Made by a program: the position numbers and the translations under genes. A stretch of DNA of 63,366 nucleotides, counting the filler, from Choristocarpus tenellus KU-1152 (Eukaryota; Protista; Phaeophyceae): NCBI GenBank assembly GCA_964200185.2. It is 11 parts of 11 records of this genome, joined end to end, with 100 filler letters (N's around TTAATTAATTAA, not from the genome) between each part and the next. Parts side by side here need not be neighbours in the genome. Positions count along the whole stretch, not along the records: positions 53,607 to 59,170 come from CAXNAD020010410.1; 10 more parts are not named here. One strand, written 5' to 3'. The notes beneath the pieces are model-generated. The model was not told where the DNA came from, ran no database searches, and was given only the letters and a program-made list of their open reading frames with translations. Shown piece after piece: positions 53,507 through 59,170 of the stretch (position 1 is its first letter; each line of letters begins with the position of its first letter).

Positions 53507-54364
53507 NNNNNNNNNNNNNNNNNNNNNNNNNNNNNNNNNNNNNNNNNNNNTTAATTAATTAANNNNNNNNNNNNNNNNNNNNNNNNNNNNNNNNNNNNNN
53601 NNNNNNTCTTGGGCCCCCCACCCACCTACAGGTGCCCCCTACCACCCCATCCTGCGCAACAAATGCACGAAGCACCCATTGACGCTGTTGCCCAAACTTC
53701 CCCTTAAGTCTAGGGTCAGATTTCAACAGAATCAAGGAAAGAAAGGCCAAGGAAAAAATATCTCTTCCTGTACTAGCTGATCAAACAAAACCCTCAACCA
53801 GACAGCAGCATGCCAAGCCAATCAGTGACACGAGCAGACCCTGATCGGAGCAGAACTCAGACCCTGACTATCAGTAATGATCGGATCAGAACTCAGTATA
53901 ACCCGTACCTCAGTTAGATCTCAAACTTAGGGTTAGGGATGCGTGCGGTAACCCAAAACCTAACATTACAACCATGGCAGAAATTTGACCCAGGGTGAGT
54001 CAACACGGCATACGGTTCTCCGTCAGATCCGGAACAGTAATCCCAATAACTCCAGCCAAGTCCACACTTTTGATCCACCTGACCAAACCAACCAACCAAT
54101 AACTTGGTGAGCACAACAACCACCCGACGCTCTCGTGCAGCTTCTGCTGTACTTCAAAAATAATAAAATGTAGGACTGCCAAAAATAATAAAACTCATTG
54201 AGGGAACCCCCCCCCCCCCCAGCGATCGAGATTGTAAAGACCGCTATCGATTGCTCCTGCAGAGTACTACCAACAGCTAATCTCCTGTACACAGAAAACC
54301 ATTACACCCCGCAGCACAACACCACTGCTGCACATTCGAAAGACAGAAGCAAGGCATTGCACAC

Positions 54365-57300
54365 CTCTTGGTCAGGTCGGTGGCCTTTCCTGCCCACGGG
54401 TCTTGGCCCTTGATCCACTCCATAAATACCTCCGCACAGTCTCCATCCCACAGCGTGCCGTCGGCGTCAAACACGGCGAGAGGAGCCCCTGCTCCGCCAT
54501 CAGCATCCGATAACTTTCCACTCACCAACCGATTCAAAGATCGGCGAACCTGTTGTGCGTATCACAGGCAGCACCCAGGCATGATCGCACGTAAGTGATC
54601 CAACCCATACAAGATGCCAGAAAAAGGGCAAATAAAAAAACCAGTATTTAGTAGTAGTAGTAGTAGCAGAGGATACCGACCACCCCCCTGGCCCATGTCT
54701 ACAATGGACTAACCCAATAAAAAAAAAGAAGCAGAGGAAGAAAGAATGCCTACAACGCACCGTGCAAAACTGTCATAGTGCACACTACTGGATTCTGTTT
54801 TAGCAGTGTGTTCCCTGGCTGCTTTGTATATACTCAGTCCAAGTACAAGGCTTTAGAACCTCGGTTCAAAATGTGAACAGAGTTGGAACCGCAAGCATTG
54901 AACTCTTGTTCGGCAACGGTTGATTCCATCTCGGACCTTACATCACTACGAAGGTGTAGTGTAGTCCTCCTCCATCAAAAGATGATACTTTTCCTGACAC
55001 CTTGAACTACACCTTGTATTTGAAAGACTCAGCATCTTCTCGGAGGGGGAAACTTGTACCTCTCTCAATTTTTTCAGCTAGAACCTTAGAGAAATGCCCC
55101 ACATACCTGGTGGATAGTGGTGTAGACCATATATAACTTGACTGTACCTCTCACCTCTGGTTCCCAGCGGTCACTCCACTGTACGCTCTGACTGCCATCT
55201 TCCTTGCATAAGCCCTCCCCATACGCCATGATCTCCTCAAGGTCAGCTGTTGTTTCTCCCAACGTGGGAGGGGGCTTGGCAAGCTCTTTCAGCGCAATAG
55301 GTGGTAGAACAAATGACGCCGAGTGAGCTTCTGGACTGTAGAACACAAGGTCATGCCTACACACGAGGAGCACATCACAGAGCAAGGGTCACTGTACAAG
55401 AGCAAGGAGCGACGATCAAAAGTTGGTGTCTTCTTTAGCTACGTTTGCAATTACTCAGGCCTGGTTTGGGACAACAGACTATTTAGTTCTTAAATATTCA
55501 CTCTTTTTTCTTTGCTAAGTAACATGTGCTTGCAAATTTTCACTGTCCAAGTGGTTGCCACAAGTAGAGAGTCCCTGAAATGCTTGGAGTGGTGGAGTTG
55601 GCGATGCATTTCCCGGAAGCAGCAAGGCAAGTGATCAAGGCATCGAGAACATCAGCACGAGAATATCCAGTCACCAGAAATAGAACAATGGCCTCGGGGC
55701 AGCGCATGGTAAGGCATCAAACAGGTACATGCAGCTCTAAGTAAGTTTGTGGAATTGTATGCTGGGTAGGTAGAATCGACCTGTACAGGGACACACCTTT
55801 TGCAGAGGTTACTTGCTTTGGCAGAATCAACATCAGAAGGATCATCACCCAGTGTGGCTATCTGGAGGTTCCACAACCCACCCGGGTACACTGCTGTGAA
55901 GCTGGGAAGTGGGGTAGAAAATAGGACAAATGATGAAGTGGATACACGTGGATGAGAAACAGTGGGCCCCTGAATAGGCACGTGGATAAACACCGCATAC
56001 GCTCAGGAAACATCAAACTAGGCAAAAATGGTACAACCACAACAACAGCGTAAAATAAGAAAGCAGAACCATATTAATAACAGGCAACAATCTGGAGTGG
56101 CATTCTGTTACAGAAAAAAGGACACTATATAGATAAACATCGAAACAAATATGGAACAGTGACTATGTTCCTCACACTCCGTGGTACTCTTACTACACTA
56201 CTGCCCACACCATTGACTCACCACTGAATGGGGACGACAACGGGGAAGGACTTCCGGAGCCCATGATAAACTGTTCGGAAAACCTTCGGCAGGTACCAGA
56301 ATGAACCTCCTTGGACAGCCACAGCCCCCTTAGGTCGAATTCGATGACGTAGTAAGGCGTAGAACTCATCACTGTAAAGTGCTGCACCTGGTCCAACAGG
56401 ATCACTGGCGTCAACCACAATCAAATCATAACCTTCACGACTCTCGTCTGCCAGAAAAGCAACGCCATCTTCCGCCCTAACGGTTAGCCGTGGGTCAGCG
56501 TCAAGCGGTATGTGATTGCCAGGCACCGAGTCTGGGTGCCTCCATATGCCTGGCATGTATTCTTTTGATGCTCGCATTACCTTTAAGGACAGAAGAAACA
56601 AGGACATCAGCTGCAGTGTCTTCCTTCCAATGATAAGTTTGGTCCACAAGTGTTTCATATTGTGGGTCTATTGCACCCTTTGACTGTTTGTCTCGTACAG
56701 AAAATGTGAGGTAAGATGAGGACGAGGGCTGCTATTGGAGTAGTAGAGGTTAGGAATAAGCCAGAGGAATGCATTGCCATTCACGCTAAGCAACAATACC
56801 ACATGAGGGAAATAATAGGTACCGCAATTGATACCATCAGAGAGAGGATCGGGTACCCCAACCAAAGAAAACAGCCTTGTCCTAGATGTGTCAATGTGGG
56901 GACTCCATCTTAGTTAAAAACATCTTATTCTCACGCTTCCTTCACCTCCGCATCGATATCGACGAGGTCGACGGTGGCAACATCTTGGTGGCGAAGAATC
57001 TCGCGGGCTGCCCCCCCATCTCCACCCCCAATGATGAGGGCCCTCTTTCCCTCACCATGGGCGACTCCACTCCTGCAGAGCGGCACATGCGTAATCATTT
57101 CGTGGTATCCTGCCTCATCGCGTTCGGCGCATTGCAGGGCATTATCGAGCACCAGCAAGCGTCCCATGGCAGAGGTCTCAAACACCTGAAATGAGTCATG
57201 TTGGTCGGAGGTAACCGAGGACATACATCTGGCGGACTATGTCACCACATTCTATTGGGCTTCAATCCAACAATCTTCCACTCAAAGTGGCACCTATGGA

Positions 57301-57721
57301 CTGACAGCTGAAACAATAAAGTCATCCAAAGTTAGTATTTGATAGGGTCAAGGGCACAACCAAGACGTCACAGGTTTAGTGAAGTTCGGAGGGTGCAGCA
57401 CCTCAAACTAGGACAATCGGGCCATACCTGTACATGCTGAAAGACGCTCCTGACGTCGTGAACGATCTCTCCGACGCTCACCGAGAAAAGTACGCCACGA
57501 TCCCATGGATCAGTAACCCACCTGCGGTCGGGGGAAAGACCCGACCGGGCTACAGCAACAGTTCCTGTAACTTCTCCTTGGACATTTTCGACGCTGAGAA
57601 CGTGTGGCTTTCGGCTGGGAAGATGTAGTAGAGTAGGTTGCACAGCAGCACTAATGAAGCACCAGATGGAATCAATGCTGCACAGAACTACAACGACAAA
57701 GAAGGGTCTCGTGTTGGTCAT
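54365..57721 (-). CDS. speE: Spermidine synthase-like aminopropyltransferase fused to a HAD-superfamily phosphatase domain; exons 57721-57428, 57185-56946, 56580-56222, 55901-55797, 55356-55155, 54549-54365 (3' end unresolved)
   Basis: LVLDNALQCAERDEAGYHEMITH, LIIGGGDGG, VDIDAEV, IVVDASDPVGPG, YPGGLW, YSPEAHSASFVLP; then AVFDADGTLWDGD (HAD motif I); five phase-consistent GT-AG introns. Confidence 0.88.
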
Positions 57722-58027
57722 GATACTAGGTATTGCACAGAATACACCACACCTCTCACATCGTCTTAAAACATCATAAACTATTGTTGTTTGAATTATT
57801 CGGCCCTGGGAGGAGCTCTGGGCCGTAACATGTGTCAATGTATGTTTGTGAACCACAAAAATTGGCTTTTGTCCAATAAGAAAAAGTAGACGATGTGAAA
57901 GATTTTTTATTGATCCACCCATCTACATAAAAGATTGGAGGGTGGAGTGTAGAGGTGTGGAGGTGTGGATGTGGGGCAATGCAACACCACCCCTCCTTCT
58001 TTGCACAACTTAATGTATTTACCGAAA

Positions 58028-58803
58028 ATGGGGAGAATGGGGGGCCGGAAGCATAATTACTACGCGTTAGCCGTGCTGACGGTCTTAAATGTGATCAACT
58101 TGTGGCACCGTTATTTGATCGTGAGTTGGACATCGGACAATCTCTTACACCGTTGCACCAGCTTCTTTCCTGTCCCGACCGTCCTCATGGTTTTGAAAGA
58201 GAACTAGAATGGTATCTAGATATTTGACCTCAATATCCTTTCTATTGGGCGGGGCATGTGTCAATGGATGCCGGTTGTACCCGAAACTTGGATTGTAGTT
58301 GAAACTCTTGGATTTGTGTCCACGACCAGAATGGAGGAAAACTGGGGAATAGTTCTGGCAATACTCCCTTATCCTGACCATTTCGTTCAAAATGCTGCAT
58401 CAATCCCAACCTCCTGTGCTGCAGTACAATCTTGCAGCCGTGTCAATCGACGAGTGCTCTGACCCATGCTCTGGCGTCTCGTTTCTCCCACTCTGCAATG
58501 CTGGCGAGGTGAAGTTGTGGTTCCATTACCAGGCCCACATCCCCCCTGTCTATATGTTGCCAAAACTTTGCGAGGGTTTGTTTCAACTATGTAGATTCCG
58601 AAGTCACCGCCACGCTTCTTTGGGCTACTGGTGTGTTATGTTCTTGTCCTAAGCTTTGCTATTGAGATTGTGTAAGAGGTTCTGCTTGTGGTTGTCATTT
58701 TCGGTTTATGCCTGGGCACTGATAAATTATAAGCAACGTTGGATATGTACTCTATTGCACAGGAATGTAGCACCCACGAATGCCAGCAATCAAGTGATGT
58801 TCG
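58028..58803 (+). CDS. MFS transporter (spinster-like), 5' part with a Cys-rich first loop; exons 58028-58120, 58425-58508, 58763-58803
   Basis: YYALAVLTVLNVINLWHRYLI resembles TM1 of spinster-type MFS; canonical splice sites; truncated by contig end. Confidence 0.55.
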
Positions 58804-58979
58804 GTGGGAAGTCTTCTTTGAAATTCGTTGCTGATACGATAGCAAGTGCGCCATGGCGCACTAGGTTGGTGTGGTAAATGACCAGTGCTTCAAATGCTTA
58901 CGCGTCAACTTTGAACTTGCCATATGAACCCTGTTGGACGTAATAATCAAGTGCATAAGTGTTGGAAAGTTATCCTCGA

Positions 58980-59132
58980 GGGTCAAAGTATCTGAGGGGG
59001 TGGGATGGTTTGTGAGGGGGCGTCCGTTTCGGTCAAACTCTTTTTTTTGCTGACATTTCAAATCCGACACGTGCGACCAAATCACACCAAAAAAGTTTAA
59101 AATCGAAAAAAGGGTGAAAACGGACGCCAACC

Positions 59133-59170
<38 letters not shown>
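58980..59170 (+). mobile_element. MITE family A-related subfamily copy
   Basis: Same TIR GGGTCAAAGTATCTG and internal ATCCGACAC.TGC.ACCAAATCAC; otherwise diverged; ends in a C tract at the gap. Confidence 0.65.

What the first reader, a model, noticed from the sequence alone, without database searches (positions are those of the whole stretch)
54365..57721. Spermidine synthase spliced in frame to a HAD phosphatase domain
Seen: the aminopropyltransferase C-terminus (FYSPEAHSASFVLP) has no stop. It continues through a linker and a phase-0 GT-AG intron (55155/54549) into WEPE|VRRSLNRLV...AVFDADGTLWDGDCAEVF, a DxDGT HAD motif. Knowledge: this segment resembles the N-terminus of phosphorylcholine-phosphatase (PchP)/PSP-like HADs. 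Fusions I know of pair SpeE with AdoMet decarboxylase (bacteria, diatoms) or saccharopine dehydrogenase (basidiomycetes); I do not know of a HAD fusion. Inference: a bifunctional enzyme that could aminopropylate and dephosphorylate a phosphorylated amine acceptor (non-canonical polyamine chemistry) or couple to methylthioadenosine salvage.
Basis: partly seen in the sequence, partly recalled or inferred. Interest (0 to 1): 0.8.

Follow-up and report, generated by a model that had tools for sequence, protein, structure and literature searches.

The report
Brown algal polyamine synthase–phosphatase fusion
Brown seaweeds carry a real, spliced gene that joins a spermidine-synthase-type enzyme to a phosphatase in one protein, probably sent to the chloroplast; I found no paper describing this pairing, and what the phosphatase acts on is unknown.

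Summary
Observation confirmed. Six minus-strand exons (57721-54365) are stop-free. One contig from a public run lacks all five GT-AG introns, including the phase-0 55155/54549 junction, and runs 940 nt past the piece's last exon. The host is a brown alga, closest to Discosporangium. Full-length aminopropyltransferase+HAD orthologs occur in Ectocarpus, Scytosiphon, Hapterophycus, Discosporangium, Undaria and one unidentified intronless eukaryote, with HAD motifs I-IV intact. No other such fusion appeared in the top 150 of a 1.8-billion-protein search. The transferase keeps the dcSAM and diamine residues. The HAD fold is closest to phosphorylcholine phosphatase and three uncharacterised HADs (Z 22-25), not MtnX (14.7). 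Best reading: a plastid enzyme with two working but probably uncoupled sites, making a polyamine and dephosphorylating a small amino-alcohol-type phosphate. Aminopropylation of a phosphorylated acceptor is disfavoured because the pocket stays acidic, and MTA salvage is unlikely. The architecture already sits in databases as 'spermidine/spermine synthase'; I found no paper on it.

The parts
57428..57721 (-). Exon 1: ATG, leader, start of the spermidine-synthase tetramerisation domain (Trp28-like TDPW at 57514-57503; Gln49-like FQHVQ at 57442-57428)
57656..57721 (-). Predicted signal peptide (21 aa, hydrophobic core) followed by Phe at +1 (IWC|FISAA): ASAFAP-type plastid leader; judged by pattern only, no SignalP or ASAFind run
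   Evidence: criteria from PMC4329603
56946..57185 (-). Exon 2: aminopropyltransferase core (QCAE, YHE, GGGDGG at 57029-57012, VDIDAE)
56222..56580 (-). Exon 3: AEDG, catalytic/gate loop VDASDP (56415-56398), VQGGS
55797..55901 (-). Exon 4: VYPGG (Tyr241-like) motif
55155..55356 (-). Exon 5: transferase C-terminus and inter-domain linker, ending WEPE
54550..55154 (-). 605-nt phase-0 GT-AG intron joining the transferase and HAD parts; removed in the X3 contig; same position in two other genomic loci (L002, L003)
54365..54549 (-). Exon 6: start of the HAD-IB domain; motif I DADGT and acidic +9/+12 residues (FDADGTLWDGD at 54471-54439)
53607..54364 (-). Start of intron 6; the next exons (about 175 codons by the ortholog, with motifs II-IV) lie beyond the piece's edge
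   Evidence: no X3 cover below 54288; the loose end is absent from the piece; no tblastn match here

Best explanation
A nuclear brown algal gene for one plastid-targeted protein with two working enzymes that most likely act on separate substrates. Shown: splicing into one frame, conservation of the fusion, intact catalytic motifs. Inferred: the N-domain moves an aminopropyl group from decarboxylated SAM onto a short diamine (putrescine or similar), giving a spermidine-type triamine plus MTA. Inferred: the C-domain is a Mg2+-dependent HAD-IB phosphatase working through a phospho-Asp, most likely on a small amino-alcohol phosphate (phosphoethanolamine, phosphocholine, phosphoserine or histidinol-phosphate type), with glycerol-phosphate as an alternative. 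Inferred: the fusion arose once, before brown algae diversified, from two stand-alone genes, and now shares one leader and one promoter, like the basidiomycete spermidine synthase-saccharopine dehydrogenase chimera.
For: Spliced contig across all six exons. Orthologs with both domains in five named brown algal genera plus P0055 and P0063; they form one branch of the transferase tree, SH-aLRT 96, quick tree. Transferase residues match characterised spermidine synthases: Gln49, Gln70, Tyr79, GGGDGG, Asp173/Asp176 loop, Tyr241, Trp28-like lid. HAD motifs DxDGT, TAS, K and GNSxDD are invariant in the fusions. HAD model pLDDT 92.8; nearest folds PchP and three uncharacterised HADs at Z 22-25, then phosphoserine phosphatases at 16.6 or less. 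Asp at +9 is invariant in 22 of 22 rows, and Glu at +12 (PchP Glu43 by motif spacing) is in 18 of 22. Both halves occur alone: transferase in Chrysophaeum with a stop after the linker and no HAD within 6 kb, in choanoflagellates and in SpeD-SpeE fusions of myxobacteria-like bacteria; HAD in Fibrocapsa and Bdellovibrionota. No HAD of this family lies beside the three closest bacterial transferase loci.
Against: No assay exists. Sequence cannot fix the amine substrate of an aminopropyltransferase (PMC11107197). The fusion is kept in every full-length brown algal model seen and in a more distant eukaryote, which could mean coupling. The Glu208-like pocket residue is Gly or Ser, though about a quarter of ordinary SpeE hits also have Gly (rough pattern count). 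The plastid leader was judged by pattern only. A plastid source of dcSAM is not identified. The full-length model was too poor to show how the domains pack (pLDDT 58.7, pTM 0.42).
Confidence: 0.55

Rival explanations
1. Two consecutive steps of one undescribed pathway. Most plausible order: the HAD first releases an amino-alcohol (for example ethanolamine from phosphoethanolamine), and the transferase then aminopropylates it to a hydroxylated polyamine. The reader's order, with aminopropylation first on the phospho-amine, is less plausible.
For: Fusion retained across brown algae and P0063. HAD nearest to PchP, which hydrolyses phosphocholine and phosphoethanolamine. The transferase sits on a long, well supported branch (SH-aLRT 99) apart from the ordinary SpeE hits sampled, and none of the solved structures matched was close to it. 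Glu208-like position lost.
Against: The pocket keeps both gate-loop Asp residues and the Trp lid, with no basic residue gained in the segments checked. Unfused kin sit in ordinary polyamine contexts: fused to AdoMet decarboxylase, once beside a deoxyhypusine/homospermidine-synthase-like gene. The 14 of 82 HAD loci with speD-speE nearby are one clade (13 tested, 100/97), and the one tested SpeE belongs to a different subfamily.
Confidence: 0.22
2. One domain is mainly regulatory or has drifted in function; for example, the HAD senses a phospho-metabolite and tunes polyamine output, or only one activity matters.
For: The HAD half diverges faster than the transferase half (exon 6: 19 of 53 aligned codons change the residue; exon 3: 26 of 119). 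Motif IV reads GNS rather than GDS.
Against: All catalytic positions of both domains are invariant in nine fusion sequences. GNS or GNT is the norm in stand-alone kin and in 4ovy.
Confidence: 0.12
3. The HAD is an MtnX/MtnC-type methionine-salvage phosphatase that helps recycle the MTA made by the transferase.
For: MtnX is also a HAD-IB enzyme, and MTA is the transferase's by-product (established knowledge). MtnX 2fea appears among fold hits.
Against: TIGR01489 matches 3 of 25 homologs, best E 0.033. MtnX Z 14.7 with 11% identity and human enolase-phosphatase E1 Z 9.8, against 22-25 for the PchP group. No salvage gene among the common neighbour families of bacterial kin that I identified.
Confidence: 0.06
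4. Artefact: two separate genes, or read-through of exon 5 to the stop near 55086 is the main product.
For: X3 has low-depth contigs over intron 5 (mean 1.2-3.9 against about 80-143 on exons), and its library type is not on record.
Against: One contig spans the junction. An independent contig pair encodes the intact 644-aa fusion in a single ORF. An intronless genomic copy exists (L006). The intron position is shared in L002 and L003.
Confidence: 0.02

Closest known systems
Spermidine synthase / polyamine aminopropyltransferase (SpeE; PF01564+PF17284; B. subtilis 1iy9, Arabidopsis SPDS1 6o65, human 2o05)
   Same: Domains and catalytic residues; best PDB match E=2e-47; thermospermine synthase 6e-29 and spermine synthase 7e-08 score lower.
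   Different: Just under the NCBIfam equivalog cut-offs (247.9/260 and 216.6/249.55). Distinct clade with a W-x-H-P insertion and QGGSFW; N-terminal leader; C-terminal HAD.
Pseudomonas aeruginosa phosphorylcholine phosphatase PchP (4as2) and uncharacterised kin 3fvv, 4ovy, 4gxt; HAD-IB (TIGR01490/TIGR01488)
   Same: Fold (Z 25.0, rmsd 2.5 over 232 residues), DxDxT motif, Glu43-like acid.
   Different: 24% identity. No Glu42 equivalent, shorter cap, motif IV GNSxDD rather than GDTPDSD. Below the TIGR01490 cut-off (71/98.3), above TIGR01488 (48/45).
Basidiomycete spermidine synthase-saccharopine dehydrogenase chimera
   Same: Spermidine synthase with a second enzyme fused at its C-terminus; the two roles are described as disparate (PMC5620651; P0245).
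   Different: Different partner, different transferase clade, no plastid leader.
AdoMetDC-aminopropyltransferase (SpeD-SpeE) fusions of bacteria and diatoms
   Same: The nearest bacterial relatives of this transferase (52-56% identity; Haliangiales, Deltaproteobacteria MAGs) are SpeD-SpeE fusions.
   Different: Those fuse consecutive steps at the N-terminus; here AdoMetDC is absent and a phosphatase is at the C-terminus.
Ectocarpus siliculosus CBN76674.1 / UniRef D8LBG5 'spermidine/spermine synthase'
   Same: Ortholog with both domains.
   Different: The name ignores the HAD domain. The model lacks the leader seen in 690-691-aa Ectocarpus sp. models. No functional test found. It may be the Cu-repressed Esi0000_0445 of PMC4108028; I did not verify that identity.

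Membership tests
Aminopropyltransferase (class I, SpeE-like) | PF17284 + PF01564 domains | tested here: met
Aminopropyltransferase (class I, SpeE-like) | dcSAM motif hhhhGGG(D/E)G and acidic motif 3 | tested here: met
   ALIIGGGDGG and VDIDAE in exon 2
Aminopropyltransferase (class I, SpeE-like) | Catalytic Asp173, Tyr79, Tyr241 equivalents and gate loop | tested here: met
   VDASDP, GYHE, VYPGG; mapped through PDB alignments of plant, worm and Bacillus enzymes
Spermidine synthase (putrescine-specific) | Trp28-like lid closing the amine pocket | tested here: inconclusive
   TDPW aligns with the C. elegans Trp by sequence; that region had pLDDT under 50 in the model
Spermidine synthase (putrescine-specific) | NCBIfam equivalog cut-off | tested here: not met
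   247.9 < 260 and 216.6 < 249.55 for ortholog P0055
Spermidine synthase (putrescine-specific) | Putrescine-to-spermidine activity | not testable with these tools
   needs an assay; the motifs do not distinguish substrates
Thermospermine synthase (ACL5) | hhhhGGGEGA motif | tested here: not met
   GGGDGG here, although one Ectocarpus record is labelled ACL5; the paper notes exceptions
HAD-IB phosphatase | Motif I DxDxT | tested here: met
   exon 6
HAD-IB phosphatase | Motifs II (T/S), III (K), IV (G-x-S-x-D-D) | tested here: inconclusive
   invariant in nine orthologs, but outside the piece for this gene; only the first 11 further codons were readable
HAD-IB phosphatase | HAD core with helical cap; TIGR01488 cut-off | tested here: met
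   ortholog domain:
Phosphorylcholine phosphatase PchP | Glu42-Glu43 alkylammonium site | tested here: not met
   Glu43 equivalent kept, Glu42 equivalent is Ala/Gly, by motif spacing; the Tyr82-84 triad was not tested
MtnX / MtnC methionine-salvage phosphatase | Family HMM and nearest fold | tested here: not met
Histidinol-phosphatase (Pseudomonas type) / SerB / PgpC | Equivalog cut-offs | tested here: not met
   41.8/280 and 11.2/144; PgpC matches 4 of 25 weakly
Nucleus-encoded plastid protein (ASAFAP) | Signal peptide, Phe at +1, basic and hydroxylated transit peptide | tested here: inconclusive
   pattern seen in the window and in P0055, P0060, P0062, P0082; SignalP and ASAFind not available

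The most novel reading that the evidence does not exclude
The fusion is a two-step plastid enzyme for an undescribed brown algal metabolite: the PchP-like domain frees an amino-alcohol from its phosphate ester and the transferase aminopropylates it, giving a hydroxy-polyamine. This would be an aminopropyltransferase pathway with a phosphorylated precursor, which I do not know for this enzyme class.
Probability: 0.2. Interest if true: 0.8.

Novelty: new variant of a known kind. Interest (0 to 1): 0.47.

Why it matters
Brown algal polyamine metabolism has hardly been studied at the gene level. This gives a conserved, probably plastid-located aminopropyltransferase from a separate subfamily with myxobacteria-like, pelagophyte and choanoflagellate kin, tied to an orphan phosphatase. 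It is directly testable: expression in E. coli polyamine mutants, a phosphatase substrate screen, and an Ectocarpus knockout. If the sites are coupled it points to new polyamine chemistry. If not, it is one more enzyme fusion of the kind reported as common in early brown algal evolution (about 7% of genes affected by fusion or fission; bioRxiv 10.1101/2024.02.19.579948).

Tried and rejected
The mixed alignment A4 was discarded: HAD-only rows fell onto transferase columns. The full-length AlphaFold model was too poor to use. No viral relatives. No Rfam match and no notable repeats in the piece. Candidate downstream exons inside 54364-53607 (ORFs near 54292-53914) were rejected: no Pfam or tblastn support, no X3 cover below 54288. 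The Bdellovibrionota HAD/speD-speE neighbourhood was rejected as support for coupling, being a single clade. Whether the Phaeothamnion HAD is fused cannot be told: its contig has only about 500 bp upstream. Paper searches found no text joining aminopropyltransferase with haloacid dehalogenase and fusion, or with brown algae. The 2025 survey of eukaryotic spermine and thermospermine synthases does not mention Ectocarpus or brown algae, and the brown algal genomics supplements do not name the gene. Two older papers on such fusions were not held, so absence from the literature is not proven. The big protein search was used once, because the distribution claim rests on absence; it lists only the top 150.

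Full report
Scope and method. Only the piece 53607-59170 was used. Following the operators' note, the spliced model was examined exon by exon by reference and the joined step was left out; a natural full-length ortholog (P0055) was used wherever a whole protein was needed. 

1. The observation. The minus strand holds six exons: 57721-57428, 57185-56946, 56580-56222, 55901-55797, 55356-55155 and 54549-54365. They are stop-free in the running frame, bounded by AG and GT, and sum to 461.67 codons; the exon 5/6 junction is phase 0. Pfam finds the spermidine-synthase domains on exons 1-3 and a HAD match (E=6e-4) on exon 6. Three runs of one study hold the stretch. X1 and X2 lie on it without joints. 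X3 has a single 2319-nt contig that passes through all six exons and skips exactly the five introns, including the 605-nt one at 55154-54550. X3's library is not on record; exact removal of five GT-AG introns makes RNA the simple reading. The contig goes on for 940 nt with letters that are not in the piece. The first codons read R-Y-Y-E-L-L-D-Q-G-E-K, like the ortholog's RYYSLLNDGNK. The ortholog needs about 175 more codons (525 nt), and its own contig has about 400 nt after the stop, so 940 nt fits a complete HAD domain.

2. What it is. Exon 3 finds relatives at 72-80% identity, the named one from Ectocarpus. Exon by exon, the closest named protein is from Discosporangium, so the host is a brown alga near that lineage (inference). 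Full-length proteins with both domains occur in Ectocarpus (including CBN76674.1, named only 'spermidine/spermine synthase'), Scytosiphon, Hapterophycus, Discosporangium and Undaria, in a 644-aa single-ORF contig (P0055), and as an intronless gene in an unidentified eukaryote (P0063; neighbours include Gar1, SepSecS and ABC1). Two other genomic loci have the junction intron at the same place and three to four further HAD exons. An exhaustive search with P0055 showed, in its top 150, no other protein matching both halves. The transferase belongs to a distinct clade (SH-aLRT 99; quick tree, midpoint root) with SpeD-SpeE fusions of Haliangiales and Deltaproteobacteria MAGs, loricate choanoflagellate proteins and a stand-alone Chrysophaeum protein; the fusions form one branch (96), with P0063 sister to the brown algae. 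The HAD half has stand-alone kin in Fibrocapsa, other marine eukaryotes, Bdellovibrionota and Myxococcota; its deep branching is unresolved. No donor or direction of transfer is claimed.

3. Anatomy. Leader: the window and four orthologs begin with a hydrophobic stretch followed by a small residue and Phe (IWC|FI, TSG|FV, ATA|FI, SRC|FV, GTA|FV), then a stretch with few or no acidic residues. This is the ASAFAP plastid signature (PMC4329603). P0063 and Chrysophaeum have Leu at that place. No predictor was run. Transferase: equivalents of human Gln49, Gln70, Tyr79, Asp173, Tyr241 and Trp28 are present (PMC12812037; alignments), with GGGDGG rather than the thermospermine-type GGGEGA (PMC11107197). 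The second gate-loop Asp, which from my own knowledge binds the far amine of putrescine, is kept. The Glu208 position is Gly, as in roughly a quarter of ordinary SpeE hits. Phosphatase: DxDGT, TAS, Lys and GNSxDD are invariant in nine fusions. The domain model (pLDDT 92.8) is closest to PchP (Z 25.0), 3fvv (24.3), 4ovy (24.1) and 4gxt (22.2), then phosphoserine phosphatases (16.6 or less) and MtnX (14.7) (Foldseek gives the same top group). Asp at +9 from the nucleophile is invariant; from my own knowledge, the acid at that place binds the amino group of serine in phosphoserine phosphatase. Glu at +12 matches PchP Glu43 by spacing, while Glu42 is missing. No named HAD equivalog is reached.

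4. How it most likely works. Best reading (0.55): the protein is imported into the plastid. The N-domain makes a spermidine-type polyamine from dcSAM and a short diamine. The C-domain separately hydrolyses a small phosphomonoester, most likely of an amino-alcohol. Splicing, conservation and intact motifs are shown; location, substrates and independence are inferred. Independence rests on three points: the acceptor pocket is acidic and unchanged; each half exists alone; and bacterial kin give no repeated link between the two. The HAD's usual neighbour is glpD (76 of 82 loci, nearly all Bdellovibrionota, so largely inherited synteny). The 14 loci with speD-speE nearby are one clade, and the one tested carries a different SpeE subfamily. 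A fusion of spermidine synthase with an unrelated enzyme has a precedent in basidiomycetes. Rival (0.22): a coupled route, more plausibly phosphatase first and then aminopropylation of the freed amino-alcohol. Rival (0.12): one domain is regulatory. Rival (0.06): MTA salvage. Rival (0.02): artefact. Unexplained: where plastid dcSAM would come from, and why the fusion is retained.

5. Comparison and novelty. It works like a class I aminopropyltransferase and like a HAD-IB phosphatase, and meets the sequence tests for both broad families. It does not meet the tests for thermospermine synthase, PchP proper, MtnX, SerB or histidinol-phosphatase, and falls just short of the spermidine synthase equivalog cut-offs. 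The architecture is already present in public records but under a name that ignores the HAD domain. I found no paper on it; one study lists a Cu-repressed Ectocarpus 'spermine synthase' Esi0000_0445, which may be the ortholog (unverified). Some key older papers were not held.

6. Verdict. A real, conserved, apparently undescribed fusion of two known enzyme types: a new variant of a known kind. Interest 0.47. The most novel open reading, a coupled pathway to a hydroxy-polyamine, has probability about 0.2 and would merit 0.8.

Noticed in passing
window 58028-58120 and 58425-58508, + strand: A divergent, head-to-head spliced gene starts about 300 nt from the fusion's ATG. X3 shows the 304-nt GT-AG intron removed (contig depth about 1490) and continues outside the piece. 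Exon 1 recalls the N-terminus of Spinster-like MFS transporters (from memory); Pfam finds nothing on either short exon.
   Followed up: partly
window 57037: One X2 contig (depth 6.7) reads A>T, which would turn the Leu before IIGGGDGG into His: an allele or an error.
   Followed up: no
window 59133-59170: A long G run on the minus strand at the piece's end, probably a sequencing or assembly artefact.
   Followed up: no
P0024 (Undaria model, 1154 aa): GTP cyclohydrolase II and DHBP synthase are joined in front of the fusion; probably a merged gene model. No RibA/B match in L002, L003 or the piece.
   Followed up: partly
P0068 / L176:6001-8969 and L006:7446-8764: The Chrysophaeum model joins an ABC1 kinase to the transferase, with a leader-like Met between them (likely a merge). 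L006 also has an ABC1 gene beside its fusion, but only 22% identical.
   Followed up: partly
L002:13517-13972 and L003:5501-5938: A KDPG/KHG aldolase exon lies on the opposite strand downstream of the fusion in both loci: conserved synteny.
   Followed up: partly
L007:6951-9356: A deoxyhypusine-synthase-family gene sits directly upstream of the SpeD-SpeE fusion that is the nearest bacterial kin, suggesting homospermidine-based polyamine synthesis there; the 379-aa gene after it has no Pfam match.
   Followed up: partly
L015-L094: The stand-alone HAD kin in Bdellovibrionota lie divergent from glpD (76 of 82 loci) and often upstream of an aminopeptidase P gene; glycerol-phosphate is a possible substrate.
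   Followed up: partly
P0071, P0120: Loricate choanoflagellate members of the same transferase clade carry N-terminal hydrophobic segments; a link to silica-associated polyamines is a guess only.
   Followed up: no
P0062 and P0086: The Discosporangium model has an insertion of about 85 aa inside the HAD domain (likely a retained intron). The E. siliculosus model CBN76674.1 lacks the leader present in other Ectocarpus models.
   Followed up: no
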